A stretch of 64,000 nucleotides of DNA from Oculina patagonica. Taxonomy: Eukaryota. Position 1 is the first letter of the stretch. The number at the start of each line of letters is the position of its first letter. A program made the translations under genes and the position numbers. Location: contig NC_135761.1 in NCBI RefSeq assembly GCF_052425735.1, positions 22,878,001 through 22,942,000 of the forward strand. The letters run 5' to 3'. Shown here one piece after another: positions 208-57,747 of this stretch. Below the pieces are notes generated by a model, which was not told where the DNA came from, searched no databases, and was given only the letters and a program-made list of their open reading frames with translations.

Positions 208-242
208 GAAGTCTGAAGTCTGAAGTCTGAAGTCCGAAGTCT

Positions 243-290
<48 letters not shown>

Positions 291-419: not shown

Positions 420-489
420 GAGGAGGGACATCAGATTTCAGACTTCAAACTTCAAACTTCAGACTTCAGACTTCAGACTTCAGACTTCA

Positions 490-523
<34 letters not shown>

Positions 524-559
524 AGACTTCAGACTTCAGACTTCAGACTTCAGACTTCA

Positions 560-593
<34 letters not shown>

Positions 594-660
594 AGTCTTT
601 AGACTTCAGACTTCAGACTTCAGACTTCAGACTTCCTTGATTTCCGCTGACCTCCGAGTT

Positions 661-1796
661 GTTGAGTTGTTAGATCAGGCAGATCCACTATTTAAGTAGT
701 TAATGTGAGTATTGTAGATGTTTGTTTTGTTTCAATTAAAAAAAAAAAGATCCGCTATCTAAAAAGCCGGCGTAACGGCAGAACGAGAATCGGCGTAACG
801 AGATTTTTTTTTTCAATAACTTAATTAATTTATTGCTATGAACAAAATTAATTTAATAAATTCCCACCTTGGAGACCTGCTGACAGCGGTACCTGGAACC
901 ATTTTTTTTTCTTTATTCACACAAAATAGGCCGCAACATCGTTTACGGCTTATACATGACCTCTGGACTTAATTACGTAAAACTGGACAAACAAACAAAC
1001 AAACAGTAAATATATTTCACAAAATAAAGGGCATGCATATCTTCTTAATCCTTCTAGATCGATCTAGAGCCAGGATTTCGATTTTATTTCGAGTGAGGAT
1101 TTCAGGGAGAAGGTCAGTAGCACGACTGCCCTTTGGACTTTCTCGCCCCGATCGAGACAATGAAACGTACAAAGCCGAAGCAAGTCAATGAAGCCGTTGG
1201 AAAAAATGGAAGGGCCTGAGAAGTTACTGATTTCGTAAGAAAAAGAAAGAAAGAAAATGAAACGCCCACAACAAGGGGTATTTTTAGTTGGTCACCTATC
1301 CAAGTACTAATCCCGCCCAACAGGTCTTAATTTCGGCGATCGGACAAGAACCGTTGCTTTCCTTGTGGTATCAGAAAGAGCGCGTAAATCAGCTAATAAA
1401 AGTTAAGTCCAGTTTTAGCAAGAAAGTGCCAAATTGTCCAAAAGATCCATTTAAACCAGGAATGTCTTTTTCTCTAGTTGCATAACTCTTATAACCCTTT
1501 GTCTCGTGTGACTGTACAGAGGTCATGTATAAGCCATAAACGATATTGCGGCCTATTGTGCGTGAAATAAAGAAAAAAAAAATGGTTACAGGTAAGTGAT
1601 AATTAATAAATTTAATTTTGATCATAGCAATAAGTTAATTAAGTTATTTTAAAAAAATCTTGTTACGCCGATTCTCGTTCTGCCGTTCCGCCGTTCCGCG
1701 TTCCGCCGTTACTCCGATTACTAACAACCGGATCTGACTTTTTAGATAGTGAATCTGACTTTAAATAGTGGATCTGCCTGATCTAACAACTCAACT
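661..1796. mobile_element. Non-autonomous inverted-repeat element (~200-bp imperfect TIRs) nested in the left TIR
   Basis: GTTGAGTTGTTAGATCAGGCAGATCCACTATTTAA (661) vs TTAAATAGTGGATCTGCCTGATCTAACAACTCAAC (to ~1795); further inverted matches at 775-860 vs 1600-1690. Absent from the right TIR. Confidence 0.8.
1259..1376 (-). pseudogene. Diverged 5S rRNA-derived sequence
   Basis: Minus strand reads ATACCACAAGGAAAGCAACGGTTCTTGTCCGATCGCCGAAATTAAGACCTGTTGGGCGGGATTAGTACTTGGATAGGTGACC...TTGTGGGCGTTT, colinear with metazoan 5S including A-box- and C-box-like segments, with many substitutions. Confidence 0.75.
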
Positions 1797-3829
1797 ATCG
1801 CTTAAGAAACCGTTCAAAATTAAATCGGGATATAACCGATATCGATAATTCAATTGTCGAGGTCGGAAATGAATTATCGTGGTCGGAAATAGTCCCGACC
1901 TCGATAATTCCTCTTTTTCTCGGGTCTGAATTAATTCCGATATCGATAATTTATTTGCGGGAGTTGAATTATACCAGGGTCGGCTATAAATTTCTGGGGT
2001 CAGGTTTTCATGCCAGGGAAGGGGAAAGCCTTTTTTTAATTCTGACCTCCGAAATTTTTTACCTATTTTCGATATCCGAATTTCTATTACCATGTATAAC
2101 TCAATAAATACCGGTGTCCATTTATGATTTTGCGATGGGGGTGGGGGTGGAGGTGGGGGTGGGGGTGGTGGTGGGGTTGTGCTGTAACCGAGAGTAAAAA
2201 TGGATATTCAACCCCTTTCCTCTCTTTGTTCTTACTATCTTTTTAGTGGGAGGGGAGGGGGTAAGGGGGTAGTATAATGACGAGAAGTATCTTTGCCAAA
2301 AACGATGTTACAAATTTCCCTAATGTATTTAAAAAATTACAAGAAAGCTAGTCTAAGAACGTTGCCATTAACCAAATATATGTTATTTTCTCTTTTAAGA
2401 AACGATTTCTACTTTTTCCAGATAAGTGTCCAAAAAAACTTTTACGGCCAAAATGTGCTGTGTTGATTCTTTCACAGAACAATAGCAGATACCGATTACT
2501 TCTTTTTTGTTTCTGGTGTGTTTTTTATGAAAAATAAGCTGAATGTTGAAACTTTTCCTTAAATTCCTCAAAAAATTTCGCCAAAGTTCGTTAATCTTCC
2601 TTTTTTGGAATTTAAGCATAAGGTTGGACTTTTTGATACCTATTGTAAATGCGAACAAATGCTATGATGCGTTGTGATATCTCGTGATACCTCGTTATGG
2701 CTAAGACAGTTGGAAAAGTGACCTCTTCAAATTTGTTATCCTTATTTATTCATTGGAAGAGAGCGCACTAGTCGTCCAATCTTATCTAAAGACGTAAAGG
2801 ACGCCGGGCGGACCGAGGATTTGAAATACTTCTCGACTCTCTTCTCAGCAATGTTGTGCTAAGGGGTCTGCTAACTCAAGTAGAATGCCAACTCTCAGGC
2901 CGCCTTTTTATGGGCCAAAAATTTATTTGTCCAAATTCGAGTTTCCGAGTTTGTGCATGAGGTTTTCATTTCTTTTTCAGTAACAAGACGCAACGGTTAA
3001 CAGTTTTAAAATATTTATTTACCAACTCTTTGCTACAACATCAATAAAAAGGTCAAACAAAACGTCTGCTAAATACCACACATGTGCATGAATAGGGTTT
3101 TTCGCACACACACACTTATTGCATGGTAGGCCTTACCAGATTGTGCGCGTAAAATCTCTTAAAGGGTTCTCACTGGGATGCCAAAATGTAGCTTACCCCC
3201 CCCCCCCTCCCAAAAAAAAAAATCCAAAATCCAAAAAGTTACCCCAAAGTTAATGCAATTTGCCCAAAAGTTGGCAATCTGGAAAGGCCTACTCATGACT
3301 TAACTCGGATTTGATTCGCCATACTATTCAACACACTGATTTGAATAATTAATAATCCTAGTTGTATTTGTTTCAATTTTTCTGGATTATTTCCGATGTT
3401 TTAACAATAAAAGATGTAATAGATACTGGAAGTAAAACATCGCTTCTTAGTGATCATCTTCGTGTTTATTATGTACCTCATTATGTTAACATTTTCGCAA
3501 TTCGCAACTGTAACTTTGATTTGATTCTTTCAACCTTTTCTCACTTTAAATAGTTTAATTACGTAAAAATGCATAAAAAGCATAGCATTGTTAAACTCTG
3601 AACTGTAACTTCCAGTGGTTTCCCAATTATCACTGCAAATTTTTACTTGCAACTCCTCTTGAGTAGTAAACTCTTAAGTATTGACATTTTTTCTTAAGTA
3701 TTTGCATAATAATCTGTCCCTTTAATTGAACTGTCCCTCTAGGGAAGACTTCATTGCATATCAAATAAATTCATTATTAAATTCAAACTGGTGGCAAGTC
3801 CATAAACGTTTCTTTTTAGATGTTTGCGT

Positions 3830-6800
3830 TTACATCGAAATGTCAATTTTTTCGATGAAAACTTTGATGATCAACCAAGCCCTTTCTTCTGCTCTTTCTT
3901 CCAGGGTCTTAAGTTTGATTTCGGTTCCAAACATCTGCCCTTCTTTAATTCTTTCGTCTTCCAAGGTGAAGACGTCATCCCCGTCCTGTCCGGCAATTAA
4001 GAATCTGCCAAATTAAATTATTAAGAGGGTATATTAAAGGGGCTATGTCACGGTATTTAAGTCATTTTTCTGATTGCTTTTAAAGCTAAAGAAACCTGAT
4101 CAAGATAATAGTTTTCCAAGATAGGAAAACATCAACGGAAAGACAAAACCCCGAAAATAATAAAGGATGGTTACAAACTTAAAGCAAGTGTCATTTTTTT
4201 CAAGTTGACTTGTCCGTGTCGTAGCCCGTTTAATAGTCAATTTTATCTAGGTGGTTTAAATCATACAGGCTAATAAATCCAAAAAATGCACAACTGATAT
4301 TTATAAAATCATAAACAGGCAAGGTTTTTTAAAATATCTTTATATATCTTTAGAAAGCCTTCTAGTGCAAATTTTGTTAGTACTGCTAATTCTAATTCTT
4401 AGCTCGTTCAGCAATAAATAGAATGCTTGTTCTATTAAGGTGCACGAAATTATTTCGAACTGTAGCTTACTCGTCAAAATGACATAACTTAAATTACAGT
4501 TAGTGAAAGTTGAAACTCACCTGATTGCAACTCTAATCGAATTGACTGCTGACCTCAACTGTAGGTAGAGACTGCAGTTTGGATTATTAATTTTAAGGAC
4601 CATCCTCCATCGCTTCCCATCCATTTCAAACACATCACTTGTCATTGGTTCTTTATTCATTTTTTCAGCTGCCCTCTCTTTAAAGCTGTCTATCGTCCAC
4701 GAAAAACAACCCAGGGACAATGCTGTTTTTTTTAAAAGGGCCTTCTTGTCCTGCAACATTCAAATTGCGAATGAGCTCTTAGTTCTCTAATTCTTTCGGC
4801 GTGTTTGCTTAAGCGAACAAATTCAGATTTCCCAAGGCTAGTGTCCTTTAGTTAGATTTTGTTTAGATTTTCTTATGCCCCTGCTTGCGCTGGCTGTGCC
4901 CAATAAATATATTTTGCATAACTTACTTTGCTTAAAAGGGCTTGCTGCAGAGCTGCCCTTTCCTCAAGAAGAAGAGCGACGTGCTTCTCAGCGTGATCTC
5001 GGTTGTGCTTCTCCGTGCTCTGGCTGTTACCCCAAAAGTTACAACCAACAATACTGCACTCTCGCTGCCTCATTTCACAGGCACTAAGATGTACTTGCAA
5101 TTCTTTCCTGTAGGTAAAAAATTGTTGATGTTGTTGATGGGAATGTTAATGAGACCGATTAACTTGATTACCGTTGTCTTGTTAACATCCTGGCTAAAGT
5201 GATTATAATGCTCTTCTTCAAAGAAGCAGTGATAACTCGAAAAAACAAGCTTTGAATAACAAATAGTGGCATAACTTTACTTTAATCGTGTCTTGTTTGT
5301 TATACTCTGTAACTTCATTGCAACATTTCTTCCACTTTGCCCAGTCTCTTAGCTCGATCAGCCTTCACTATTTCTAATTGACAGTGCTCGGTTTTCCACT
5401 GTTATTTTTTCCATTGCAAGTATTTATAATTTTGTGAAAATAAAGATTGTAGGAAATAAAGATTGTTGTTGTAGACTTGTTGTGGAGAACTATAATATTA
5501 GATAGGGCTTGCGCACGCGCTATGTTATCATATTTCTCATATAGGATCATACACCTATAAGGGTTGGCGAAAAAAAAAAAAATTGCACGCGACAGGACCG
5601 AATTTGTTGCGTGCACTTTTGTCCTTGTTATTGAGTTTTGCAAATTCTTGTAAAATTCACTATGGCTAAAGGTAGCTTCCACATGTCCAAAGAGAAAGAA
5701 AACCCCCTACCATTCGGTCTTGTCGCGTGCACTATTGTAGTTCTTTCCGTTAATCTTTCGATTCTCAAAATAGCTGTATACAACGCGCTCGTGGAATAAC
5801 TGTTGAGTGTACAAGGGAAAGTCTCGATCTTGTTAATAGTTGGCTCGCACGGAGTGTGGGATAGTGTGATAATGCCCTACAATTAAATGAGTGTGAGCTG
5901 TATGTAATCAATTAATTATTTTTCTGCTATCCTGACGAAGTAAACGACTTGCTAGACACAAACGCCACGAGCTGCTGCGATTTACTAGATAAGAAGTCTG
6001 TTTTCGTCGTTTTTGCTTAAGCTCCCGGCTAGAAAATGATGAAAAAAATGAACTGTTGGGCTCAAGTCGTACTTTTTTGGATATTGCTAAAGTCATTCTC
6101 GTTGAGGTCGCTCATTACAGTATTAAAAGCACGTTAACAATAAATCTTTTTTGCTTAATTACGGTTGTTTTGGTAGTGTTATATTTTGTCAGCACAACAG
6201 AAAATTAAGCGTTAATCTTAATCTTTGAATTATCCCAATAATATCTCAAATATTAAACTAATCTTCAAATAGTTGAGCAGATAGAAAAGCCAAAATATCA
6301 TGATCGAACCGAACTGATTATAGTAACAGGTGCGCACCGAGCTAAATGTTGTGCTATATTGTGCTGGTATCCGGTCGCTTCGTTCCAAGGTTACTTCGTT
6401 CCAAGTCACATCGTTCCCACTGTTGTTCAGATCGTTCCCCCCAAAAAAATTCACATCGTTCCAACTAAAAGTTACTTCGTTCCATCGAAAGATTCGATCG
6501 CTCCAAAAGAAAAAAGTTAGATATAAAAGACGATCCAAGTCATAAAAGGTTTTCAACTCAACTTATTTGCGTTTGATTTACCTAAGGCTCAAGGCTAAAC
6601 GCATGTAAAGGAGTTTATAGCAATTTTCTCACTTTTAAAGCCACACGCAAAGTGCGAACATATGCTAATTGGAGGTGTGATATTTCATTAATTGCTTGTT
6701 TTAAGAAACGCAACTTCCATAGTTGATTACTCGTTGCTGTTCTGTTTCACGTTTATCAAACGGCAAAGTAAGACGTAAAAAAAACTGCATTGCTCGTATT

Positions 6801-7827
6801 GAACAGTCGATCGCATGGATTACAAAATTTAACAACATCGAGTAGTAATGTTTTCAATAATGTTTCCTTATAAACATTCTCTTTAGGAAATTAATATAAC
6901 GCTCTGACTTTTCGATGGAACGAAGTAACTATTATTTGGAACGAAGTAACTTTTACTTGGAACGAAGTGACTTTTTTTTGGAAAGATCTGACCAAAAGTT
7001 AGAACGAAGTGACTTGGAACGAAGTAACCGTGCAACCTTTTCTGCCTTACCTTTTCGGTCGCAGGCTACACTTCAACGGACAGCTCATCGTGGTCTCTGG
7101 GCACATTTGCTCAATGTGCACGTCTTCGTTAGCAACAGTTGTGTCGCCGTAGCACTTTTCACAAGAGATTATCCTATATAGGCACTCCTCGGCGTGGGTT
7201 CGCTTATCCTTACGTTTCACCGTTTCTTTGCATCCCTCATTGTAGCATTCCCGCTCTTCTTCCGGACATTTATGTTGAATTAATGCTTCTACTACGTCCT
7301 CTCGCCCGCAAAGGTTGCACCTCGCGCGTATCTGCGCAACGAGCTTTTTCACGGTATAATTCGTCTGGGAAGTTCCTTTTATAATATTTCTGCAGTACGG
7401 ACATTTTTTAATGGCTTCTTGTCTGACTCTAGAAACACAAGAATTGCAGAATGTGTGCCCGCATTCGGGCAGGATGACCGCATCCAGCATGAGTTTATCG
7501 CTGCAACAAAAATCAATGTATGTCACAACTGATTTCAAAGTTACATTGTGCATACAGCATTTATTTATATCTTTTCGACCATCAGTTTCTTATTTTGACA
7601 AAACCATATCATTCGCTTGAACTTGTTGAAAGTGTCAGCAAAGTCGCCAGTTATCTATGCTTAAACGCTCTAATTGTTGAAGTCTTGCGCGTTCAAAAAA
7701 ATAAAAAAACACTGCATGTTTTACTTAACTCTTATCTCCTTGTTGTAAAACAAATCTAAGTTATTACTTACCAGACATAACACTGATAATCGCCAGAAAC
7801 GTCTTCGATTGGAGTTAAATTTTCCAT
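3830..7827 (-). CDS. TRAF-like E3 ubiquitin ligase (C3HC4 RING + TRAF-type Zn fingers + coiled coil + MATH), 363 aa, 5 exons
   Basis: Exons 7827-7772, 7500-7051, 5107-4927, 4750-4521, 4004-3830; all GT-AG and phase-consistent (1092 nt). RING CYVC...CGHTFCNSC...CPYC; Zn fingers HKCPEEERECYNEGC and HIEQMCPETTMSCPLKC; MATH-like FSWTIDSF...SDVFEMDGKRWRMVL...SLYLQL. Confidence 0.88.
6372..7030. mobile_element. MITE with subterminal (GGAACGAAGT)-type repeats in TRAF intron 2
   Basis: CGGTCGCTTCGTTCCAAG... arrays at the left and the inverted ...CTTGGAACGAAGTAACCG arrays at the right. Confidence 0.75.
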
Positions 7828-8628
7828 GAGAAGACTTGCTTTAGATTACTACAACTCTTAGCTGCAACTGTCTGTTGGGCAGTGATCGATTGTGATTTAT
7901 TCGCGAGTTTGATTTTCCCGTCAGGACCCCTGGGACTACTTAAATTTAGTAAATACTTGCTAATTACCAGCCTCTTATCACACACAGCATGATGCATCAG
8001 TTATATAACGATCTTCAAAAACGATTAGCTAGTATAAAGATATGTGACTTCAAATACATGTTTTTTCCTGCAATGACATCCTATTTTCGCTAATGTACGC
8101 TTTAAAAGCCAAGAATTTCAAGATGAAACACAAAGACGCTGGCAACGTATGACAATAAAAAGCAATTGAAATGTGAGATAGTCATCGCGACAATGCTTTT
8201 TTCACGAGGTAAACGGATCCAGCAGTCTAGAGGAGTGTGCTAGGGCACTTGAGATGCCGTCGTATTGAATAAATGTTGGAAAACCTTCCTTAGGCCTTAA
8301 GCCAAAATAGCGGCAAAACACGAAATTTTCGTGTGTGCGTTGAAAAGTGCATTTAAACGACAGTAGAGTTCGAACTAAGGCTCCTAGTTGAGAAAAACTT
8401 CAAAAGATTGTATCTTTCTGGATACTCTTTCACGAGAGTGCAAGTAGATAAACATACGCGTCGACCAAGCAAGAAAGAAAAGAACGAAAAACTTTTCCAA
8501 TGATTTTCAAAATCATTTTTTGTTGCTTTTGCATCGAAAGAATATGAACAAATGTATTTGCTAGTCGGAAGCCTCAAGCAGAGCCATGCCGCCCGAATAC
8601 TCACGGAGCTTCTACCGATTTCGGTCCT

Positions 8629-9624
8629 GGGGCCCGTTTCTCAAAAGTCCCGAGAATGTTTCGGTCTCGAAAACTTTTCGGGGCTGTTTTCGGGCGCGTT
8701 TCTCGGGTTCGGAAAAACGTTTCTCAAAAGGTCCGAAAGAGTCCCGTGTTTTTCGGGGAGGTTTTCGGGATTTGTAACGCAAGAAATAGCGCGTGCTTCA
8801 ATTTTCCAGCCTGTGATTGGTTCAAACATTGCAATTGACTTAGCACTGAGTTGGGTTTGTCACGTACGCATCAAATTCAAAACTTTTTCGAAGAATCGTC
8901 TGCAAAGTTGTACAGTTTCAGCAATGTTTATTTTTTAACACTGATTCACCTCTGGGCTACTTAATGTACGGCAGCCCTTGATGTATGTGTTTTTAAAAAG
9001 CGTTTCTGTTTGTTTAATTTTGTTTATTCGCGGCTTGTGAGTTACGAAGCTCGCGCTACAAACAGCCATTGTCTTGTTGTTGAGCCTTGAATTTGGTTGA
9101 ATAAAGTTACTTTTGGTTGAATTCTTCTCCATCATTGTCGCTCAGCACTTTGACGGACTTGCTGTACATACACTGAATGAATTTCGGAAGTTTTTGTAAA
9201 CAATTTCAGGCGGAAAAAGTCGGCGATCAGGTACGTTTTTAAACCGCGCTACGTTCTCTTCGCGAAGTAAAAGTTCTTCTTGGCGCGCCGGAGTTTGTTT
9301 TGAAATTTGTCAATTAAACAACCTAATTCTGCTAGACTTTTTTCTCTCTCACATCCTGTAATGTTGTCCTGTTCATACAAGCCTTTCACCGCTCTTTGTT
9401 TTCAAAAAAGTGCTTCGGAGATGCAATTTTATAGCGACAAAATAAGTCCCGAGAAGTGTTTTCGGAAGGTCAAGAGCTCCCGCAAAGTTTACGGGTAAAA
9501 TGAAGTGATTTTCTCGGGCACGAAATGCTCGGGCGTTTTGAGAAACACAAAAAAGAGTTTCTGGAGCTTTACGGGACCGTTTTCGGACCCGAACTGTTTT
9601 CGGGACTTTTGCGGAACGCGCGCC
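8629..9624. mobile_element. Non-autonomous PIF/Harbinger-like TIR element
   Basis: CTG-GGGCCCGTTTCTCAAAAGTCCCGAGAA ... TTTTCGGGACTTTTGCGGAACGCGCGC-CAG; repeated TTTTCGGG subterminal motifs; CWG flanks. Confidence 0.65.
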
Positions 9625-10997: not shown

Positions 10998-11235
10998 CCG
11001 TATTTTCTCGATTAAACGCCGGGCCCCGAATAAACGCCGGGTCTCCAAGTTGTATTTGAAAATAAACCCCTTAAACAATTTTTAAAGGTTTAATATGATT
11101 TAAAAACAATGTCTAATTATAAAGCTGCCAAGAATAATGAATAAAAATCGTTTCTTAGAAACATAGGGCTTGAAAAAACTTCTATCGGGCCAAGTTTGAA
11201 ATAAACGCCGGGGGCGTTTAATCGAGAAAATACGA
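10998..11235. mobile_element. Tc1/mariner-type MITE (same family as 63568-63829)
   Basis: TA-CCGTATTTTCTCGATTAAACGCC ... GGCGTTTAATCGAGAAAATACG; near-identical to the copy at 63568. Confidence 0.8.
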
Positions 11236-11649
11236 GAACCCATTTGCACTTTGATTTTGAAAGACAATTAATAGTGCCCTCTTCCCAACAAAACAGTTGA
11301 TGTTTTTTATTAGATAGACGTCAAATCTTTGAGAATTAGCAATGTGATTGAGCCATTTAATGGCCCAATCAGACATTGCTAATTTTGAAAATATTGATAC
11401 CTGATCAAGATGTATCACAATTTTTCATACGATCAGTCCATTCCTCAAATGGAGAGGTTTAAAATGCTTGACACAAAATGATAAACAGAACATTAAGGTA
11501 CAAAGATGTGTAGAATATCTTGTTGTTTAAAAAAATTCTGATGTACAGTTGAACCCCGTTATTTCGAACCGTCAGGGGAAACAAAAAATAGTTCGAAATA
11601 GCGGGAGTTCGAAATAGCCAATAGTAAATGACTGAAGGGCAAATCCAAG

Positions 11650-23000: not shown

Positions 23001-26000
23001 GGGTAATGATAAGGTACCAGTAACAATAACATCAGGCAATAAATCAAGGAAGTGTAAGCAGAATAGCATGAGTCCATTCATTGACTTGGTGTTGGCTTTG
23101 ATCGAGTCATTTAAACTTTTCAGTGTTAAGTTGACTTAACTTAAAGTATCTTACATTATTGTTAATAGTGCCTTCTGCGGAGTGTCGCGATTATCACATG
23201 CTATGCTTAGCATTGGATCATTCACAAATGTGGCTACTTATCCTCATCGAGCCCATGATGACTCTTGAGACCGAAATGTGGCTAAGAGCATGCCAATTTG
23301 GCTATTTTACAGGCAGGTTAAATTTTACTAGAAATTAAAGACCATATATGACAGGTTGCCCATATGAGAATAAAGTTCGTCGCCACTCTTCATGTAGGAA
23401 TACAACCTTAATATATGCATGTACAAAGAAATTTAATTGTCATGTCTTGAAGATTCAAGTGGGAAAGTCTTGAATAATATGCATAGCAAAATCAAAGCAA
23501 TGAATACTCTTAATAAACATTTGGAGAGTTAAAGTTCACTGAGTGATGTAAATGTAAATGTTGTTTATAGTGGTCATGCACTTAGCTTCATATCTCTTCG
23601 AGATAGCTAGTTTACAGGCATGCCACTGAAACAGAGGCAACAAGTATTGGAATTCTTTGGCCATTTTTAATAAAACAATTATTCCACTTGCGCTCGTTGG
23701 ATAGGGGATCGTTATATAGAGCCCCTGACAGGGGGAGTTTCCGTGTCACTGTTTTATCGCTCTTCGTGTCGCTGTCAGTAATTCAATTGAAGGAAAGTTA
23801 CTTGTCCTTGTCGAAATTTATATTTTTTTTATAAGGGTTGTCGGTTGCTTCCATTTTATTTTACGTACTGTCGCTACTTTTTGGACCATGTCGCTTGTCA
23901 GAATTTATCCTGGCAGGGCCTCTATATAGCCATCTCATATCAAATGCACACTCATGGAATAATTGTTAAATAAACATGGAATCTATGTAATGTACACTGT
24001 GTACCTGTGTTTGTGGGAACAATGATTGCTTGTGTGTTGTTAATCTGTTCTTCTGGAACAAACGTTACTGGAACGTTAACACGAGGGAGGCGCTCTGCAA
24101 GGTATACCCTTGTAGATGTGGATTTAAAATTTTCCACAACTTCTCTTCCTGAGAGGTCGGAACCAACCTTGAAGAGGGCGTGGTTCCCTGCACTTTGTGA
24201 CTTGAAGAAGTTTAAGCTTCTAAAGGTAAAAAAAAAAAAAATGACAAGAAATCAATGTGAAGAATAACAGTCTACCATGCCACTTAGGGAACAAACATTT
24301 AAATCTAAACAAAGTTGGCTGAAGTGGTAGAGGAGGAATTTTGTCACATCTTTTAGATTGCTGTAATTAAGGGTGTAGTTAGACCTGGGAGGAGGCTACT
24401 GTATGAAAGGGGGCAGATACATGTATGCTTGTTTGAAATATTTAAAAATGCTTTATGCTACGCTATGTTAGCTGTGCGCAAGGGCCCCTTAATCCTACTT
24501 CAGACTGCTAAGAGCTGACCCTGTTTGCTGGGCTGGCACCATTTAGCCAGATCTTGGCACTCTTTTAAAAATGCCAAAAAAGTCAATTTTGCAACTACAG
24601 TACATGACAACGGGGCCAGGCAGGTTATACGAGATCACAGTATTGCAAAGCATGGATCCTGTCTAGCTTGGATGAGATCTCCATCTAGTTGCGTTAACTG
24701 GGCCACGATTTAATTTCTCTTCCTAGCACGCACACTGTCAACCTTAAAAATCGTTATATATTCTTCTTTTAAAAAAGGATGTTAAGAGGCATAACAACTC
24801 ATGTAGCGGTACAAGTGTAAAAAATAAAACAACAAATTGCTAAAGAAAGTCATCAAGATAATCAGACGTAACGCCAAAATCAATCGTGCTAAATTCAAAC
24901 TGCTGTTCATGCTAAATCTGGACCATCCCACGCTGGCTCAGGATGCGTTATAAAGACATCTTGGCAAACCGAGGCAGCCTGGCTCATGAATATAAACAGA
25001 CCCTAAGTAAGATCAAAACTTGAAATTTACGCCCTAAGTGTGAACAAGAAGCATTCTTTCCCTTCTCACTTAGGAGTCCCCTCCCTATAGGGATTTAGGC
25101 ATGACCTGCATGGAATCTACATGAAAGTTTTATTTGCTTGTACTGCTATATCATGATGAAATTCTCATCTTTTCTTCTGTCAAGCTAATTACCTTAGCAA
25201 CCCCTTCAAAAGTTTGATTTTGTCAATAAGAGCCACTATTCTAATAAACGCCCCCATTCTAATAACTGTATCCATTCTTACAAGTGCCGCTAATCCAGTA
25301 AGCGCCCCTATTGTGGATAACTGAAGTCATTGACGTCGAATATGTAAACTCATGAACATCTGTCGTACTGTACTAAACGGCCTGTCGTAAATAAGCGCCC
25401 TCCCTTAATTAGCAAAGGGGTGAAAATTAATCATAGTAGCACTTAGTTATTGTATTTTTTCTTTGCAGCAGTTCTACCAGTGGAAAACAGCCAGAAACGC
25501 ACACTAAAAGCTCCCATCATGATTCGTCTAAAGATTTCCTTTCAAGTACTGACCAGGTATGTTCAATAATTGCCCTACCATAGATGATTTTTTATGTACG
25601 CAGCTATTAGAATGAGCTCCGCACCTTCTCCAAAAATATTTTATAGAGGCCACTCTTGAATAAGTACAGCGGCTATAATTTGGGTATTTACAAAGAGACT
25701 GTAAAACTATGTTCATGTTACCTCTTGTTTTTGAACAGCACTGAATACTTTCACAAGGACACTGAGAAACTGTATTCGTGCTACCTCTTGTATAAATTTT
25801 CATTCAAGAATACACACTCTCCTCAGTGTTTTAACGGTAGTTGGAATAGGCCCCGCTCTTGAGAAAGCTTTGCACCTTTAATAGGGGAAATTAAGTAAGT
25901 GCTGCTACGCTTCAACCACCATTCACAGTAATCATTGCACTTCATAAATACCAAAGGTCAACTTAAGGGACCGGTCATAAAGTAGATTTTTAGAACCAAG

Positions 26001-26722
26001 GAAGTGCTGTTTTAAAAAAAATATTCTGGTACAATTTTTGCATTATTATAATGCCATTCAGTGAATAATTTTACCATGACACACCCCTAATGCAGTGAAT
26101 TTTTTTCCTGAACCCCCCTTTTTGACATGTTGAAAAATAGTGACCCACCCCAAATTATTCATAGCCCACCTCCCCCCCCCCCCCCTTGTACTTTATGACC
26201 AGTCCTTAAGACCAACTTTATTACTTCTAGTGTGTTGAAAAATACATGGGTCTCCTGGTTTCCCGAGATCAATAGATTATTCTAAAATTCTAAAACTTCG
26301 CGTCATGTTATGTTCGCGTCACTTTATTTTCGCGATTTTATTTAGTGTCGCGAAAATTTCATGTAATAAGCTAAAGGTACATCAAGTTACCTGCAATTCT
26401 GAGGAATTTCTCTTTTCTCCCTTTTCAGGAGCGCCAATAAGTTCTCGCCCTTGAGTTCTTTCGGGAATTTTACCTTGGAGGACGGCAAAGAAGAGAAATC
26501 TTCGGCGTTTTCATGGGGAAGCCAGACAAAAGTTCTGGTGGGCTTGTTGCCTGGTCTCCCCTTGCTGGGCTCAGTTCTTCGACCTTGCAATTGGTTGTCT
26601 GTCTCGTTGAACAATGGACCAAGTTCCCTAAGATCTTCATTAGATTGGTTCTCCATTGCAACAACAGCTTCGGCCATTCTCTGATTAACTTCACCGTAAG
26701 CAAGGTCAGGATCCTCAGACAT
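11864..26722 (-). CDS. FAF1/FAF2-like UAS (thioredoxin-like)-coiled coil-UBX protein with K/E-rich repeated tail exons; 3' end and two frame junctions uncertain
   Basis: Exons 26722-26391, 24219-24005, 22787-22755, 22637-22599, 22296-22249, 21676-21582, 20751-20656, 20206-20103, 19500-19396, 19149-19071, 18861-18780, 17887-17834, 17360-17301, 16787-16734, 16379-16278, 15967-15833, 15659-15618, 15333-15273, then repeated exon pairs to 11864. UAS-like PFVGLTFQSLCHHIRGECRPAVLFL...PLFWLSSSESSEGMEA...PTIIETFE; FAF-like coiled coil EEERNLKRKQENDLVLSEKADALK; UBX-like VKVFTPSGQLKSNFSKGGLYQEVYDWLKSQEDQPAHFVLE. Apparent +1 shifts at the T10 run 20663-20672 and in the 13851-13991 exon. Confidence 0.65.
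14585..14758. mobile_element. Tc1/mariner/pogo-type MITE
   Basis: TA-CAGTGGAACCTC ... GAGATTCCACTG-TA (TIR with TA TSD). Confidence 0.75.
16570..17937. repeat. Three ~550-bp tandem units, each with a phase-0 exon (KKENKEGQKIKSGQN[V/F]SK)
   Basis: Repeated CTTACTTTGGAGA..TTTTGTCCACTTTTGATTTTTTGTCCTTCCTTGTTTTCTTTTTTCTGAG at ~16730, ~17297 and ~17830. Confidence 0.9.
17938..18350. mobile_element. tRNA-derived insertion with internal inversions and 10-bp TSD
   Basis: TACAAACTTA duplicated at 17928-17937 and 18351-18360 (single copy in the paralogous tandem units). tRNA-like A/B boxes on the - strand at 18000-18063, with an inverted copy at ~18205-18260. A fragment of the same family is at 15425-15570. 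Confidence 0.8.
20825..21067. mobile_element. Small MITE with internal 21-bp tandem repeats
   Basis: GGATAATCTGCGAGCCAGCGAGCCAT vs ATGGCTCACTGGCTCGCATATTATCC; repeated GGTTAGCCTAAATAGCAC units. Confidence 0.7.
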
Positions 26723-27781
26723 GAGAGTATGATGGACGCAACGATGAAAAGCACGAGGCGAATACTCGAATTTCACTCGAGTCCATGTCAGATGTCAGTT
26801 GTCAATAGACCTTTTGTTTTTCATGGTGAGAAAACACAGACGTGCTTTGTCTGCACGTGGACTAACTGATCTGAGTCCATGTCGTAACTTATTTACACAC
26901 GGCATGCTGATCAACTGTTTGCTCAATAAGCTTCAATAATAACGAACTTACACAATAACCGGTAATATTAAATCAAATAATATTTTTGCAAGGAAAAGTA
27001 GGCAATTTGTTCAACAAGAATGTGACAGTTTGACCAGGGAGAAGCGTAATTAACTACTTTAATGCTTGCACAATGTTGCTACAAGCCAACATTTTTAGTT
27101 AATTATTGATCAACTTTGTAGAAATGGAAGGGAGATCTCCTTAAAAAGCGATAGCAAGCTTGTTGCTGCTAACTGATGTGTAACTGAAGTAAACAGGATT
27201 TCAGTGGCAAATAAAGTTGATTTGATTGATTGATTGATTGATTTATTTATTAGCTCTATTGTGTTATGCCTCGTTCTATAAAGAGTGCCGACACGGTTGA
27301 TTAAAGTGGCCATGCATTCTGTAGTTGCTACCGATTTATTCTTTCTACGATGTTAAAACAGTAATTACACAAATTTTAATTTGGTTAAAAAGCAAAGTAC
27401 GATTGATTTGTCTTTGTTTATTCGTTAAAAAAGTATACCTTTTCCAACAAAATTAGCATACGACGCAGGCACACGAGGTATCACTATTTATAAAAAAAGT
27501 AAGTGGCTGCAACCAGGCGCCAACGTATTCTCTTTGTGGGCCGGAAGCGACAAAACCGCAAACTACTGATCACTGTATGCAATGCGCATGCCACCACGCC
27601 GGCTGGTGAGTGTTGTAAATACAAAGCATGGCTCGTTGTTTCATCTTTGGGATTGCTGCTTGGACCATTTTGATTGCCGTGTTTCAAGCAAGTTCAGGTA
27701 CTACCTAACCTTAACCAGCTTGATCTACTCTATTCAATGTCGACTGGTCATTCTAGAAAAAGAAGGCGTCTTGATTTTTTA

Positions 27782-28159
27782 CAGAGACAAGAAAAGCAAG
27801 GCTGACACTACGTAGAAATGAAAAAACCTTAACGGGACAACGACATGATAGAGTCCAAACTGAAAGTCAAAAATGCAAACTCTGGACAGCTGTTTCGACC
27901 TGATTGGGTCTCTTCAGCAGAGTGTATGCCGCACAGAATAGAACAACCAGCGCAAAGACAGTTGTCTATAAAGTGCTCGTGGTCATGACAATCCGGATGG
28001 GCTCAAATTCAAACACTCGCCCATTGATCATTTCTACGTAGTGTCAGCCTTGCTTTTCTTGTCTCTGTATTTTTATTTTTGGCTGATTAGAGCTGTCGCC
28101 AGCTCCTACGTACACAGCAGCATTTTCGTCCGCGGTCCCTTGCTTTCTATTGTCACTTT
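27782..28159. mobile_element. Truncated Penelope-like/retrozyme-type insertion with inverted segment and 11-bp TSD
   Basis: TTGATTTTTTA at 27771-27781 and 28160-28170; perfect 42-bp inverted repeat 27780-27821 / 28028-28069; contains a hammerhead ribozyme. Confidence 0.75.
27879..27923 (-). ncRNA. Minimal type I hammerhead ribozyme
   Basis: Minus strand: ACUCUG-CUGAAGA-GACC-caauca-GGUC-GAA-AC-agcu-GU-C-CAGAGU. Stem I 6 bp, complete core, stem II 4 bp, palindromic stem III (ACAGCUGU), GUC cleavage triplet. Confidence 0.88.
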
Positions 28160-28762
28160 TTGATTTTTTAGCCTGTGTACAGCCATCCTTTATATTTTAC
28201 TAGACGGTTGTAAACAGGCTGTGATTTTATTAACATTTATTTCCAACAAACGTGTTGCATTTGCCCGTTGAAAATACACTTCGCGGGTCTTTTCTCAAGT
28301 CCGTCGCGAGTAAGCACATGTACTGAGCACGTGTCGGGTTCAGATTTTATAGCCTGCGTGGCCGGCGTTAATATTATAAAAGGGGAGGGGATGGCGAGCG
28401 CGATGCGCGAGGTGCGAGAAGAGAGCGCCTTCTCCGATCGCGCTTCGCGCTCTCTTCTCGCACCGCGCACATATCGCGCTCGAACTCCCCTCCTCCCTCC
28501 CCTTTAAACGCAGGCTAGACTAGGCTAGGCTCACATGTTAGGGACCATTCATTTAGATTTATGCCAGGGGGTGGGCTGTCAAGATTTATTATACCGCTAA
28601 TTTAAGAAAGGTTGTTCGGGGAAAAGCACAAAAGTGCACGTGACAAGGCCGAAATGAAGTCTGGGTATTCATTTGAACTTTGCATATTGGTCCAGAGGAA
28701 ATGAACAAGTTTGTATTTTTGCAGAGGAAGATTTTGTCTTTCCTCTCAGGCGGCCTTTTTCT

Positions 28763-29329
28763 GTAGCTCTACTTTTCCTAACGCGCGCCCTATATAGAGG
28801 TTGAACCCAGGCGCGCAAAGAGAGAGTCCAGGATAACTTGCATGCGCATGCGCAGGTTTTCCCCCAAAATTGGGGGAAAAACCACATTTGGCAGCACTTT
28901 TGAAAACGCGCGCGCACAGATGACGAGTTCAACTACGCCACCGTGTACTAAAGCAGGGTCAACAAAATAACTTTAAAAAAGCCAAGCTTTCCAGTTAATG
29001 TCTACTAAAAGCTATCGGCCAAAACACAACTCGCTATTCGTTTACTATTCCCAGTATTTTGTAGCTGTTTATTGTATTGGTTTTGGATGCAATTTAGCAA
29101 AGAATTTTTCTTGTATTTATTCGCGCGCTTGGTGGCGTAGTGGAATTCGTCATTTGAGCGAACATTGTTAACCTAGCGCGCGCGTCCTAAGCAAGTGATG
29201 CCACACTCCTCGCTTGTGATTGGTTCGTTCTGAGCATACGCATGCAAGTTATCCTGGACTCTCTTTTTGCGCGCCTGGGTTCAACACCTATATAGGGCGC
29301 GCGGAAGAGAGAGTTCAGGGACTGGACTA
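28763..29329. mobile_element. MITE-like element with ~90-bp inverted arms just upstream of the transposase ATG
   Basis: CGCGCGCCCTATATAG..GTTGAACCCAGGCGCGCAAA..GAGAGTCCAGGATAACTTGCATGCG vs its reverse complement at 29238-29302. Confidence 0.65.
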
Positions 29330-29371
29330 AATTTAACCAAGCGAAAATTTATACCGTAGTTACCGTTCATT

Positions 29372-32241
29372 ATGAAAGTGAATGCTGGCGAAGGTGATAA
29401 AATAGTGGGAACTGAATTGAGGCAGGATGGGAACGTGCATGGACTGTATGACACTAAATTGGGGATGTCTGGTTTTACTTAATGTAAAATTCTATGGTCT
29501 CATTTTTTTATTTTGGTTTATTCAAGTTGAAAGTATTGATCCTGGAACAATACGGGAGTTTGTGAATGACCTCCAAGACCTATATTTAAGAGCCAAACAC
29601 GCACTAGACAGTCCAGACGTATCAGCCGAACGACTAACCAGCATATGGAGAAATCTGGACGCTGCAGTGCTTTCTTCAAAGAGGATCCAGTGGCACCTAC
29701 TAACAACAAAACCGTGCTCGGAAGACATACTTGCCGCTATTTTAAATAACTTTTCCACCCTAGAAAGACTGATAGGAGCGTTAATTGATCGGTATAGCTG
29801 TCTGGTTCCTTTTCTGGTCGACGAACTACGATACCGCGCTCCTCTGACAGCGACAGGAGCCGTTGGGAGACCATCGTACATTATCAACCGAGAGCAACTG
29901 GAGATTATGCGGCGTTACGGTATATCTTGGACTGATATAGCAAAATCTCTAGGTAAGCCTGATTTGACAGACTAATGTTGTTTATTAAACGGAATCAATC
30001 ATTGAAAGCTTCTATTTTTCGTTATAGTTCACCACTGAATTTTCTCCACTTCTCATTGGTTTAAATTGATCACGTGTTCATCCGCGGAGGGCACCATATT
30101 AACATATTAATATTTTTATATTCATATTTATTTTAAGAACATCAAATTTACGCAGGGCAACTATCAGCCAATAGTTACTCGACAGAAACTTTCTATTGAT
30201 TTTGCCCAATAAGAGACTGTTGGCTTTTAGTTCGAAACTACTGTGAATAACCTAAAATGATCTAGCCCCGTTTTTTAATTCCATGTTTAAATCGCTACTT
30301 ACTTTTTACATAATTGGTAACGGTTTACTTCTTAGGTGTTTCGCTTTCGACAATCTGGAGAAGGAGAGTACATTTCAATATGGAAAGAAGACGACATGCC
30401 GGTCGCAGAACAGTTGGTATGCAAGAACTCTTGGAAATCATAGCCGAAATTAAGGAGAGGGCAGCAGGTGCAGGAATTGTAATGATCGAGGGGGAATTAG
30501 CAGCGCAATCTCTAAGAGCTTCTAGAACAGATATTGCAGAAGCCTTAATTGTCCTGGATCCAATCGGCGCCCGTTTACGATGGAGAAATATAACTCCGAG
30601 GGTGACGTACAATGTACCAGGTGGGAATTATAATATTTATGAAAAATGCTAACAACTCCAATAAAAATATAAAGACAATCTAAAAAACTTTAAACCATGC
30701 ATGAATAATGTTGAAAGTTCAACTACGAAGTTCGCAGAAAGGTGATCGTCTTTAAGCCCTATTGACTGTGTTAGGTTCAAAAGGTATAGTGGTAAAATGT
30801 ACAGCCACCATCTTTTTTTCCGTACAAAACATGCAAAACATTTCCACAATTAGCACAAAAGAGCTAAATACAATGAGAATGCAAATGAATTTTACCTCCA
30901 CGAGGCCAAGAAAACATCAGCTTGTTCTTAGAGAAATAGAGAAAACCTAGGAGACTTTTTCGTTTTATGAAAGTATTTTGAAAAAGTCTTTTAGAAAGTG
31001 TTTTAGATAAGAACGTCCGCCATTTTGGTTAGTTTGTATGAGTCTTGTCTGAGTCACATGACATTCTCGGCAAATAACGAACAACCTTTCGAGAAACACA
31101 ACTGGCATGTCTTATGTTTTATGTTTTTTATGTAATGATGTAGAACACATGCTCCTCACTCTAGCAGTCATGCGCACTAACATGATAGGTACGTAAAGCG
31201 TATGTAAAATAATGCGAAAGCAGCAAAAATTGCTGGTCTTACTAACAGTCTCCTTTCCGTATGTCTTATGTTGTTTAAGCATTTATGTTCGATTTCTGTA
31301 GGTCCAAACAGTCTGTGGCACATCGATGGAAACCATAAGATGATCAGGTAAAGATTAATTTCGGTGTAGGTAGTGTATTCACCAGTTTCTCATTATTTAT
31401 TTTCATTCTACTCTTAAATATTTCCCACCGTTTTGGAAGCGACCGTTCTAATATTATTTGTTTGTTCTTTAGGTGGCGACTTGTCGTTCATGGGGGAATT
31501 GATGGATATTCGCGACTTGTTGTGTTCCTCAATTGCTCAGACAACAATAGATCAGCAACGGTGGCCAATCTTTTTATGAGCGCCACAGATGAATACTGTT
31601 GGCCGTCGAGAGTAAGAACAGATAAAGGGGGGGAAAACGTAGAAGTGGCCAGACTGATGATTCAGCGACGGGGTGAAGGTCGAGGAAGCATTTTGCAAGG
31701 AAGCTCTGTTCATAATCAGAGAATTGAAAGGTTATGGAGAGACATGCGAAAGATGGTTACGGAGTATTTTAGACGGCTATTTTATTTTCTTGAAACACAG
31801 AACTTACTAGATCCAAACAGTGACCTAGATCTATTTGCACTCCACTTTGTTTTTATGCCAAGAATCAACCGGAACTTGACTAAATTCAAGGCAGCATGGA
31901 ACAACCACAAGTTGTCGACAGAGCACCAAAAAACACCCAACCAACTATACATTTTAGGCATGTTGAAACTGTTTGGTTCCTCGTATTGTTCTGTCACAGA
32001 CTTTTTCGAAAACAACACTGTAAATGAAGAAGAATATGGCGTATCTGAACCAGAGATCGCTGATGCAGTGGACGTGGATGATATCACGGAGGTAGTAGTG
32101 CCTGAAAACCGTTTGCGTCTGTCGGATGATTGCTTGAGGGAACTTTGCGCAACGGTTGATCCATTAACTCAGGATGGCAATCACGGCATTTCGCTCTATC
32201 TGGAAACGAAACGAATAATTAACAGTAGCACGATCGACTAA
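29372..32241 (+). CDS. IS3-like (IS3EU-type) DD34E transposase/integrase, 515 aa, 5 exons, intact
   Basis: Exons 29372-29393, 29527-29952, 30336-30620, 31302-31347, 31473-32241 (1548 nt, phase-consistent; exon 1 least certain). HTH-like GRPSYIINREQLE...SWTDIAKSLGVSLSTIWRR; catalytic core YNVPGPNSLWHIDGNHK...GGIDGYSR...RVRTDKGGEN...SVHNQRIERLWRD, with 34 residues between the second D and E. Confidence 0.92.
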
Positions 32242-32569
32242 AACTTTCATTTAAGTAGATTAAAGGTAAAATGAACAAAAACTTCGAACTTATTTGTTTT
32301 TCAAACAAACAAAAGTAAGTACATTGCTCTGATATGACGTTGACTTTTCAGTATATCATCTCCAACTTTTTAGGAAATTTAGTTTTGAAATTTTCACGAG
32401 ATCGAGCGTAGTAAGTCACGTGATCGAAATATGGAAAGTATTACATAAAAAATCGTTGTATTTGCAGTTTGGTTGCACGAAAATCCTTAAAAATCTTACT
32501 TTAAAAGGTAAATAGGCATAGCTATATATGACAAATTGTCAGATTTTGAAAGCAGTGTTATTGTATTTG

Positions 32570-34129
32570 GACCAACTTTCGAGTAACTCTCTTTTGGATT
32601 TTTGAGCACTTTCTAAGCCACATTTTTGCATTCCAGTGAGAAGCCTTTATGGCATTTTACGAACACAATGTGGTCAGGCCTACCTGTTTTTGCGAAAAAC
32701 TCTATTGACATGTGTGGTATTTCCGAACTTAAAGAATGATAACTTTAGCAGAAGTTTGTTTGAGAGTTAGTAAATAAATATTTTAAAACTCTTAACATTA
32801 CGTCTTGTTTTTGATTATTACCCAAGAAAAAGGAATGCCAACCTCATGCACAAACTCAGAAATTCGAATTTGGACAAAGAAATGTATGGCCCATAAAAGG
32901 GCGGCCTGAGAGTTGGCATTCTAATTGAGTTAGCGAGAAGTATTCCATGCAAATCCTCGGTCCGCCCGGCGTACTTTACGTCTTTAGAAAAGATTGCACG
33001 ACTAGTGCGCTCTCTTCCAATGAATGAATAAAGATAACAAATGATGTCAAGAGGTCACTCTTCCAACTGTCTTAGCCATAACGAGGTATTACGAGTTATC
33101 ACAACGCATCAACAACACATTATAGCATTTTGTTCGCATTAATTTTACATTAGGTATCAAAATAAAGATTCTGAACAACTTTTCATGCTTTGAAAAACTC
33201 GCGTTATTCCAAGGCTATACGAACGTTTACGACTATATTTTGAACATCAAGGAAGATTAACGAAAGTTTGATGAAAATATTCGAGTAGGTTAAGAAAAAG
33301 TTAAAATGTTTTTTGGACACTTCTGTAGCAGTGAAAAAATTATAAATGTATTCTTGAAAATTCTATATTTTCGTTATCAAAGGAAGGCAACATTGTAGCT
33401 TTCTTGTAATTTTTTTAAATACATTTCTAGTATCATTTAGGGATCATTTTTGGCAAAGATACTTCTCATCACCATACCACCACCTAACCCCCAAAACCAA
33501 AAGAAAAAAAACCTTACCCCCACCCCCATCGCAAAATTATAAATGGGAACCGGAATTAATTGATTTCTCCATGGGAAACGGAATACAGATATCGAAAATA
33601 GGTAAAGAATTTCGGAGGTCCGAATTAGAAAAAGGCTTTCATAAAAACCTGACCCCGGTTTTAATTACCGACCCTGGTATAAGTCAGACCCCGTTTATTA
33701 ATTATCGATATCGGAATTAATTCAGACCCGAGAAAAAGAGGAATTATCGAGGTCGGGACTATTTCCGACCACGATAATTCATTTCCGACATCGACAATTG
33801 AATTATCGATATCGGTTATATCCCGATTTAATTTTGAACGGTTTTTTACGCGATACTCAACAACTCGGAGGTCAGCGGAAATCAAGCAAAGGCGGAAGTC
33901 TCTGAATTCTAAAGGTGGAAGTCCGAAGTCTGAAGTCTGAAGTCCGAAGTCTGAAGTCTGAAGTCTGAAGTCTGAAGTCTGAAGTCTGAATTCTGAAGTC
34001 TGAAGTCTGAAGTCTGAAGTCTGAAGTCCGAAGTCTGAAGACTGAAGACTGAAGTCTGAAGTCTGAAGTCTGAAGTCTGAAGTCTTAAGTTTGAAGTCTG
34101 AAATGTGATGTCCCTCCTCGGCTTTCGTA
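32570..34129 (-). repeat. Right TIR (~1.55 kb) with subterminal (GAAGTCY)n array at ~33918-34100
   Basis: Reverse complement of the left TIR with substitutions and indels; intact terminus CCTCGGCTTTCGTA followed by flank CTATCC. Confidence 0.9.
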
Positions 34130-40014: not shown

Positions 40015-40020
40015 CGTTAA

Positions 40021-52377: not shown

Positions 52378-57747
<5,370 letters not shown>

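What the first reader, a model, noticed from the sequence alone, without database searches (positions are those of the whole stretch)
420..34129. Giant cargo-carrying IS3EU-like transposon packaging a TRAF-like E3 ligase and a FAF-like UAS-UBX adaptor
Seen in sequence: ~1.5-kb TIRs enclose an intact spliced DD34E transposase and two intron-containing, host-like genes. Established knowledge: RING-ZnF-MATH proteins (TRAFs) ubiquitinate TNF/TLR-NF-kB signalling components, and UAS-UBX proteins (FAF1/FAF2) recruit p97/VCP to ubiquitinated substrates. Inference: this is a mobile unit several times larger than typical cut-and-paste elements, carrying a coherent ubiquitin-tag plus p97-extract module. 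It could serve the element (transpososome disassembly, evasion of silencing) or spread immune-signalling genes through the genome, analogous to fungal Starships but on an IS3-type transposase. I cannot confirm novelty without a literature and Repbase search.
Basis: partly seen in the sequence, partly recalled or inferred. Interest (0 to 1): 0.92.

Follow-up and report, generated by a model that had tools for sequence, protein, structure and literature searches.

The report
32-kb coral transposon carrying ubiquitin-system genes

Summary
The finding is largely real, but its limits and part of its gene content need correcting.

- **Boundaries.** The span 420-34129 merges two nested elements. The outer 7-mer arrays (420-1795 and 33862-34119) belong to a 1.6-kb foldback-like element. 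The true transposon is 1796-33855 (32,060 bp). It has TA..TA termini, ~1.3-kb inverted arms and a perfect 6-bp duplication, CTCAAC. The empty site rebuilds 60/60 from the foldback element's other arm.
- **Second copy.** A copy on another chromosome is 99.5-99.85% identical and starts at exactly the same terminus.
- **Transposase.** It has four exons, an rva_4 integrase core and an intact D,D,E triad.
- **TRAF-like gene.** RING, TRAF6-type zinc fingers and MATH; 362 aa in four exons, intact. It travels with this transposase and terminus in at least three other coral-type assemblies and is under purifying selection.
- **Third gene.** It shares exons and an intron position with a gene inside a ~14-kb Nematostella relative. 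It looks UBX-like by motif only; no profile search confirms UAS or UBX.
- **Fourth gene.** It encodes a ubiquitin-like beta-grasp domain.

These are long-resident accessory genes, not freshly captured host genes. I rate it a new variant of a known kind.

The parts
1796..33855 (.). Complete IS3EU/GingerRoot-type transposon, 32,060 bp, with termini TATCGC...GCGATA
   Evidence: Termini, duplication and empty-site reconstruction. The homology of copy 2 (L011) starts exactly at 33855.
1790..1795 (.). Left copy of the 6-bp target site duplication CTCAAC
33856..33861 (.). Right copy of the 6-bp target site duplication CTCAAC
1796..3195 (+). Left inverted arm. It holds the conserved terminal motif TA-N10-AACCGTTCAAAATT and repeated CCGAYMTCGATAATT-like subterminal motifs.
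32614..33855 (-). Right inverted arm
29427..32241 (+). Transposase gene. Four exons: 29427-29952, 30336-30620, 31302-31347, 31473-32241. 541 aa. Catalytic D, D, E lie in WHIDGNHK, RTDKGGEN and QRIERLW.
   Evidence: The public annotation gives a 531-aa rva_4 protein here.
22124..26722 (-). Gene A (annotated LOC144649861, 264 aa). Exons: 26722-26390, 24221-23997, 22788-22750, about 22630-22595, 22303-22124. The conserved first ~185 aa contain a ubiquitin-like beta-grasp domain.
15797..21731 (-). Conserved exon blocks lie at 21677-21570, 20148-20083, 19489-19394, 18878-18777, 16343-16278 and 15967-15797. The C-terminus is UBX-like by motif only. I could not assemble a full spliced model.
   Evidence: Profile searches were negative.
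3830..7553 (-). TRAF-like E3 gene. Four exons: 7553-7051, 5107-4927, 4750-4521, 4004-3830. 362 aa. Architecture: RING, TRAF6-type zinc fingers, MATH.
420..1795 (.). Left arm and centre of a separate foldback-like element that the transposon landed in. It is not part of the transposon.
33862..34119 (.). Remainder of the right arm of the same foldback-like element. Its 10-bp flanking repeat GGCTTTCGTA lies at 410-419 and 34120-34129.

Best explanation
Window 1796-33855 is one 32-kb autonomous DNA transposon of the IS3EU/GingerRoot kind in Oculina patagonica.

Shown:
- It inserted as a single unit into the arm of a 1.6-kb foldback-like element and duplicated 6 bp of target (CTCAAC).
- A nearly identical copy sits on another chromosome, so the family moved recently.
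- Besides the transposase it carries three minus-strand genes that are old residents of this lineage: a TRAF-like RING/zinc-finger/MATH protein, a protein with a ubiquitin-like beta-grasp domain (gene A), and a gene shared with a sea anemone relative whose C-terminus looks UBX-like (ORF-X).

Inferred:
- The DDE transposase binds the conserved terminal motif and the repeated subterminal motifs, and moves the whole inverted-repeat-to-inverted-repeat unit.
- The accessory proteins act on the host ubiquitin system for the element's benefit. Possible roles are controlling transposase or transpososome turnover, or blunting a host response to transposition.
- No function was tested.
For: Structure:
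- TA..TA termini match 58/60. The 6-bp duplication is perfect. Deleting 1796-33861 gives a sequence that matches the reverse complement of the foldback element's other arm 60/60.
- Definition from the literature: IS3EU has TA..TA termini and 6-bp duplications (PMC10045372); fungal IS3EU end TAYGG (PMC12730594); GingerRoot has 6-bp duplications and relatives in coral and sea anemone (PMC6839031).
- The same terminal motif ends relatives in Nematostella, Porites and four metagenome-derived loci, which end TATGG.

Transposase and copies:
- The transposase is intact.
- Copy 2 (L011, another chromosome) is 99.85% identical over 5.4 kb and 99.5% over 6.1 kb. It starts at the same terminus with a different flank.

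TRAF-like gene:
- All four exons are GT-AG and open.
- The best PDB match is the TRAF6 RING plus zinc fingers, E=3.6e-8. MATH_2 scores E=1.7e-6 on one exon.
- The same four-exon gene lies beside the rva_4 transposase and/or the terminus in L005, L006 and L009.
- pN is 0.24-0.33 against pS of 0.77-0.85, similar to the transposase.

ORF-X and gene A:
- ORF-X shows five colinear exon matches and one identical intron position with a gene inside the inverted-repeat-bounded ~14-kb Nematostella element.
- Gene A homologues occur in L005 and in nine other proteins. Its beta-grasp fold has block-mean pLDDT of 80-97 and gives Foldseek hits to ubiquitin-like domains.
Against: - Copy 2 breaks off at the point matching window 22427, with no terminus there. 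It therefore does not show that ORF-X and the TRAF-like gene moved a second time in this genome.
- Gene order differs between lineages. The transposase and the TRAF-like gene are divergent here and in L006, but tandem in L005 and L009.
- The 19.3-kb terminus-to-terminus span in L009/L013 has no matching duplication.
- Gene A and ORF-X were not found in L006, L007, L009 or L013.
- ORF-X could not be joined into one canonical open frame by my exon blocks.
- UAS and UBX have no profile support.
- I could not place the transposase in a tree with Repbase IS3EU sequences.
Confidence: 0.85

Rival explanations
1. The two inverted ends belong to independent elements, and the genes between them are ordinary host genes trapped by chance.
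For:
- Copy 2 lacks the left 20 kb.
- L009/L013 termini lack a matching duplication.
Against: - The inner termini have a perfect 6-bp duplication, and the empty site rebuilds 60/60.
- The TRAF-like gene lies next to the same terminus, in the same orientation, in L005 and L009, and next to the transposase in L006.
- ORF-X lies inside the Nematostella element.
Confidence: 0.04
2. It is a real transposon, but the accessory genes are neutral passengers captured once, like gene fragments in Pack-MULEs or GingerRoot. They have no role for the element.
For: - GingerRoot elements are known to pick up gene fragments (PMC6839031).
- Gene content and order vary between lineages.
Against: - The TRAF-like gene keeps its full four-exon open frame and stop position across lineages whose synonymous sites are saturated, with pN/pS of about 0.3.
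- The intron position of ORF-X is kept between a coral and a sea anemone.
Confidence: 0.1
3. The unit that normally moves is much smaller (12-14 kb: transposase plus one or two genes). This 32-kb copy is swollen by later insertions and duplications and may no longer move.
For: - The Nematostella relative is about 14 kb.
- Copy 2 shares only 11.4 kb with the window, within a 12-kb span.
- There are internal duplications at 11759-13662 and 15424-18459.
Against: - Copy 2 differs by only 0.15-0.5%, which leaves little time for 18 kb of later growth.
- I found only 239 bp (10996-11234) of dispersed repeat inside the element, among the little other sequence from this genome that I held.
- The TRAF-like gene next to the terminus is an ancestral arrangement.
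Confidence: 0.2

Closest known systems
[quoted passage not shown] 2019, PMC6839031)
   Same: - TA..TA termini, with TATGG in relatives.
- 6-bp target duplication.
- An rve-type DDE transposase without an HHCC finger.
- Presence in coral and sea anemone.
   Different: - The inverted arms are about 1.3 kb, against 100-150 bp reported for GingerRoot.
- Total length is 32 kb.
- There are three intron-containing accessory genes.
Multi-gene fungal IS3EU elements: Styx in Zymoseptoria (PMC10853768) and TET/JBP plus alpha-kinase IS3EU in rusts (PMC12730594)
   Same: IS3EU transposase together with resident extra coding sequences, with conserved gene order within a lineage.
   Different: - The host kingdom differs.
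- The accessory genes are unrelated: here RING/MATH, beta-grasp and UBX-like rather than TET/JBP dioxygenase and alpha-kinase.
Burro giant Gypsy-like retrotransposons of planarians (reviewed in PMC6431247)
   Same: A very large element that carries RING and MATH_TRAF_C-type domains. The reviewers read this as possible meddling with host ubiquitination and apoptosis.
   Different: - Burro is an LTR retrotransposon with these motifs inside its polyprotein.
- Here they form a separate spliced gene in a cut-and-paste DNA transposon.
Starships of fungi (PMC9156397)
   Same: Large, cargo-carrying and mobile as a unit.
   Different: - Starships use a tyrosine recombinase 'captain', are tens to hundreds of kb long and carry variable cargo.
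- This element uses a DDE transposase, has inverted repeats and a 6-bp duplication, and carries a small, conserved gene set.
Foldback (FB)-type elements (from my own knowledge; applies only to the outer element 420-1795 plus 33862-34119)
   Same: Long inverted arms built of short tandem repeats, with a flanking repeat of about 9-10 bp.
   Different: No coding capacity was seen and the family was not identified. This is a resemblance only.

Membership tests
IS3EU/GingerRoot | TA..TA termini (TAYGG..CCRTA in fungal families) | tested here: met
   The window element ends TATCGC...GCGATA. Relatives end TATGG. Definition.
IS3EU/GingerRoot | 6-bp target site duplication | tested here: met
   CTCAAC on both sides, and the empty site rebuilds 60/60.
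IS3EU/GingerRoot | DDE transposase of the IS3-like, rve-type fold with the catalytic triad | tested here: met
   Pfam rva_4 E=5e-72. D, D, E are present in the 541-aa model, with 34 residues between the second D and the E.
IS3EU/GingerRoot | Transposase groups with Repbase IS3EU or GingerRoot sequences in a phylogeny | not testable with these tools
   No Repbase sequences are on hand. Indirect support only: the closest proteins are from corals and Nematostella, the taxa named in the GingerRoot paper.
TRAF family | N-terminal RING finger | tested here: met
   zf-C3HC4 scores 24.6 bits against a cut-off of 21. Many RING E3 structures are hit.
TRAF family | TRAF-type zinc fingers after the RING | tested here: inconclusive
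   Pfam zf-TRAF scores 17.3 bits, below the cut-off of 27. However, TRAF6 RING plus zinc-finger structures are the best PDB hits, aligned over residues 23-154, E=3.6e-8.
TRAF family | C-terminal MATH/TRAF-C domain | tested here: inconclusive
   MATH_2 scores 28.7 bits on one exon, below the cut-off of 32. It is recorded as 'weak' on the annotated product. That exon has no PDB sequence hit.
FAF/UBXD (UAS-UBX) adaptors | UBX domain recognised by profile | tested here: not met
   No Pfam hit on exons from the window or from Nematostella. None is on record for the annotated products. The best PDB results are not significant: a UBX structure (2cr5) at E=1.6. Only motifs such as V-K-V-F-T-P-S-G resemble UBX. 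The spliced domain could not be submitted.
FAF/UBXD (UAS-UBX) adaptors | UAS (thioredoxin-like) domain | tested here: not met
   No Pfam or PDB hit for the upstream exons.
Starship | Tyrosine-recombinase captain gene at one end | tested here: not met
   The only mobility gene found is a DDE transposase.

The most novel reading that the evidence does not exclude
This cnidarian IS3EU lineage carries its own small ubiquitin-system toolkit: a TRAF-like E3, a ubiquitin-like-domain protein and a UBX-like adaptor. The element would use it to control its own transposition or to disarm a host response. Copies of the E3 gene spread by the transposon would also contribute to the large TRAF-like gene counts reported for corals.
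Probability: 0.25. Interest if true: 0.85.

Novelty: new variant of a known kind. Interest (0 to 1): 0.66.

Why it matters

- **A tractable case.** This element has exact limits and was recently active. Its transposase travels with conserved ubiquitin-pathway genes, so one can ask directly whether a DNA transposon uses its own E3 ligase.
- **Annotation.** The public annotation of this locus lists these genes as ordinary coral genes and fuses two of them.
- **Gene counts.** Counts of immune-type TRAF genes in corals may include transposon-borne copies.

Tried and rejected
- **First reading of the ends.** I first read 668-1795 as a nested insert in the left arm, and the 10-bp GGCTTTCGTA as the transposon's duplication. 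Both were dropped when the terminal motif shared with Nematostella and Porites placed the true termini at 1796 and 33855.
- **Splicing of the patchwork copies.** I tested whether the patchwork copies elsewhere in the genome (L010, P0124) were minus-strand spliced products. The junctions fit GT-AG only on the plus strand.
- **Searches of ORF-X exons.** Pfam and PDB sequence searches of single ORF-X exons, and of two-sequence exon profiles, gave nothing significant.
- **Joining ORF-X.** Joining the ORF-X exon blocks with canonical splice sites failed at three of five junctions. Either exons are missing from my set or the copy is damaged.
- **Failed look-ups.** The Montipora protein and one Oculina protein were not on record.
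- **Empty site for the foldback element.** The paralogous cathepsin unit gave no empty site, because homology starts 50 bp beyond the element's end.
- **Complete second element.** The extension of L009 found the other terminus but no matching duplication.
- I did not submit spliced protein models, which exist only as long strings without a reference. The whole ORF-X and TRAF-like proteins were therefore never scanned or folded.
Full report
**What the ends really are**

The window shows three copies of one terminal sequence (GAGGAGGGACATCA), each followed by about 28 copies of a 7-mer: at 420, at 34119, and an orphan at 409.

Comparison with relatives from other genomes shows otherwise. The right ends of related elements in Nematostella (L001), Porites (L002) and several metagenome-derived loci all finish with the motif AATTTTGAACGG, about ten bases, then TA. 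In the window this motif occurs exactly twice, in inverted orientation, at 1808-1821 and 33830-33843. That puts the termini at 1796 (TATCGC...) and 33855 (...GCGATA).

- The first 60 bases of the two ends match 58/60.
- Both ends are flanked by CTCAAC.
- When 1796-33861 is removed, the joined flanks match the reverse complement of the other arm of the surrounding element 60/60.

The surrounding element (420-1795 plus 33862-34119, 1,634 bp) is almost fully palindromic, is built around the 7-mer arrays and has its own 10-bp flanking repeat. It is a separate foldback-like element that served as the target.

**Family**

Published definitions give IS3EU TA..TA termini and 6-bp duplications (PMC10045372). 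Fungal families end TAYGG (PMC12730594). GingerRoot, the same lineage, has 6-bp duplications and relatives in coral and sea anemone (PMC6839031). The window element meets the terminus and duplication criteria, and its relatives end TATGG.

The transposase gene has four GT-AG exons and encodes 541 aa without interruption. It aligns along the whole length of a 523-aa Montipora protein and hits Pfam rva_4 at E=5e-72. The catalytic D, D and E are present, with 34 residues between the second D and the E. I could not build a tree with Repbase sequences.

The inverted arms run about 1.3 kb, with identity falling from 97% at the tip to 75% inside. They hold repeated CCGAYMTCGATAATT-like motifs, which are candidate transposase binding sites.

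**Species and a second copy**

A search with the first exon of a minus-strand gene returned proteins of Oculina patagonica. One of them (P0136, LOC144649861) maps exon by exon onto the window. The look-up of its locus returns the window's own region on chromosome record CM126638.1.

A sister protein (P0137) lies on a different chromosome record. Its locus (L011) matches window 33855-28487 at 99.85% and 28494-22427 at 99.5%. The match begins exactly at the terminus TATCGCG, next to a different flank. This confirms the right boundary independently and shows recent movement.

Copy 2 ends abruptly at the point matching window 22427, with no terminus. The 14.7 kb that follow look like host tandem units. 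It therefore says nothing about the left 20 kb.

**The TRAF-like gene**

Four exons (7553-7051, 5107-4927, 4750-4521, 4004-3830) join with canonical sites into a 362-aa open frame.

- Exon 1 has a RING finger. Its best solved-structure matches are the TRAF6 RING plus zinc fingers, E=3.6e-8 over residues 23-154.
- Exon 3 hits MATH_2 at E=1.7e-6.
- Both Pfam TRAF-specific scores are below the curated cut-offs, so 'TRAF-like architecture' is the safe wording.

The same four-exon gene, with the same exon limits and stop position, occurs in other assemblies:

- **L005:** 1.5 kb inside an IS3EU terminus and next to transposase remnants.
- **L009:** between a full transposase and the terminus.
- **L006:** upstream of the transposase, on the opposite strand, as in the window.
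- **L003 and L004:** two unlinked repeats 96-99% identical, without a recognisable terminus.

Against these copies pN is 0.24-0.33 and pS 0.77-0.85, much like the transposase. The gene is therefore an old, selected resident of this transposon lineage. Its position relative to the transposase differs between lineages.

**The 'FAF-like' gene (ORF-X)**

Minus-strand exon blocks between 21731 and 15797 match, in order, exons of a gene in Nematostella locus L001 (best E-values 3e-6). That gene lies between the 98%-identical inverted arms of an element of about 14 kb that also holds the rva_4 transposase. The last intron sits at the same codon in both species.

The C-terminal region reads like a UBX domain, and a preceding stretch resembles the charged linker of FAF-type proteins. 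That comparison is from memory and is a lead only.

- No Pfam family hits any exon of either species.
- No UBX or UAS hit is on record for the annotated products.
- PDB sequence searches give nothing significant; a UBX structure appears at E=1.6.
- Three of five junctions between my exon blocks cannot be closed with canonical sites, so the model is incomplete or the copy is damaged.
- The public annotation fuses this region with the TRAF-like gene into one 782-aa model.

**A fourth gene (gene A)**

The gene at 26722-22124 (minus strand), divergent from the transposase, has a conserved N-terminal 185 aa. Homologues occur beside transposase remnants in L005 and in nine proteins from other sources. 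In one of these the first two exons are contiguous.

A structure prediction gives a beta-beta-alpha-beta-beta-alpha-beta domain at residues 60-155, with block-mean pLDDT of 80-97. Foldseek matches ubiquitin-like folds: the RING1B C-terminal domain, TBCE and USP7 ubiquitin-like domains, and a UBX domain further down the list.

**How it most likely works**

- **Shown:** the 32-kb unit inserted once, with a 6-bp staggered cut. The family was active recently. The accessory genes are inherited with the element.
- **Inferred from the family:** a DDE transposase acts on the conserved termini.
- **Speculative:** the E3, the ubiquitin-like-domain protein and the possible UBX adaptor act together on host or element proteins.

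A precedent exists. Planarian Burro retrotransposons carry RING and MATH_TRAF_C motifs, and their reviewers proposed meddling with host ubiquitination and apoptosis (PMC6431247). Fungal IS3EU elements with extra genes are also known.

**Verdict**

The core of the finding stands with corrected limits. The UAS-UBX call is unconfirmed, and 'cargo' is better read as lineage-resident accessory genes. I found no paper describing such genes in animal IS3EU elements within the library searched. Repbase entries could not be checked.

Noticed in passing
window 208-1795 and 33862-34129: A 1.6-kb foldback-like element: termini GAGGAGGGACATCA, about 28 copies of GACTTCA in each arm, and nearly its whole length palindromic. 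It is flanked by the 10-bp repeat GGCTTTCGTA. A third, orphan end (208-409) abuts it head to head and is followed by the same 10 bp.
   Followed up: partly
window 14403-14484, 20682-20774, 25469-25556, 26429-26647 (+ strand); L010 9969-10446: Four plus-strand segments with strong GT-AG signals lie inside the element, antisense to gene A and ORF-X. They occur joined without introns at two other O. patagonica places (L010, and the contig of P0124) at 80-97% identity. This looks like processed copies of a spliced transcript from a related element.
   Followed up: partly
window 35600-55000: A tandem array of at least four cathepsin L gene units (about 35.6, 41.5, 48.0 and 52.4 kb) lies just right of the insertion. 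The N runs at 37309-37472 and 43033-43226 were left as they are.
   Followed up: no
window 39556-39978: A 423-bp near-perfect hairpin (92% complementary arms), probably another small foldback or MITE-type repeat.
   Followed up: no
L012 (the window's own locus in GCA_052425735.1): The public annotation merges the ORF-X exons and the TRAF-like gene into a single 782-aa model. It lists the transposon's genes as ordinary coral genes.
   Followed up: partly
window 11759-13662 and 15424-18459: Internal duplications within the element: two units of about 1 kb, and several units of about 0.5 kb inside ORF-X introns.
   Followed up: no
L009 18057 and L013 12576 (sample ERZ25067868): Two IS3EU termini that match 85/87 lie 19.3 kb apart and enclose a full transposase and a TRAF-like gene. 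Their flanks (CATATA and CTACTT, each read outward) do not form a duplication, which may reflect an exchange between copies.
   Followed up: partly
L003 6584-15681 and L004 6776-14538 (sample ERZ25071797): Two unlinked copies, 96-99% identical, of a repeat of about 9 kb holding the TRAF-like gene. Its limits are not IS3EU termini, and one limit coincides with a MITE-like sequence that also occurs at window ~8626-8673.
   Followed up: partly
L011 7629-8229: Copy 2 has about 600 bp that the window lacks, at the point matching window 28487-28494, next to a short palindromic stretch (window 28384-28493).
   Followed up: no
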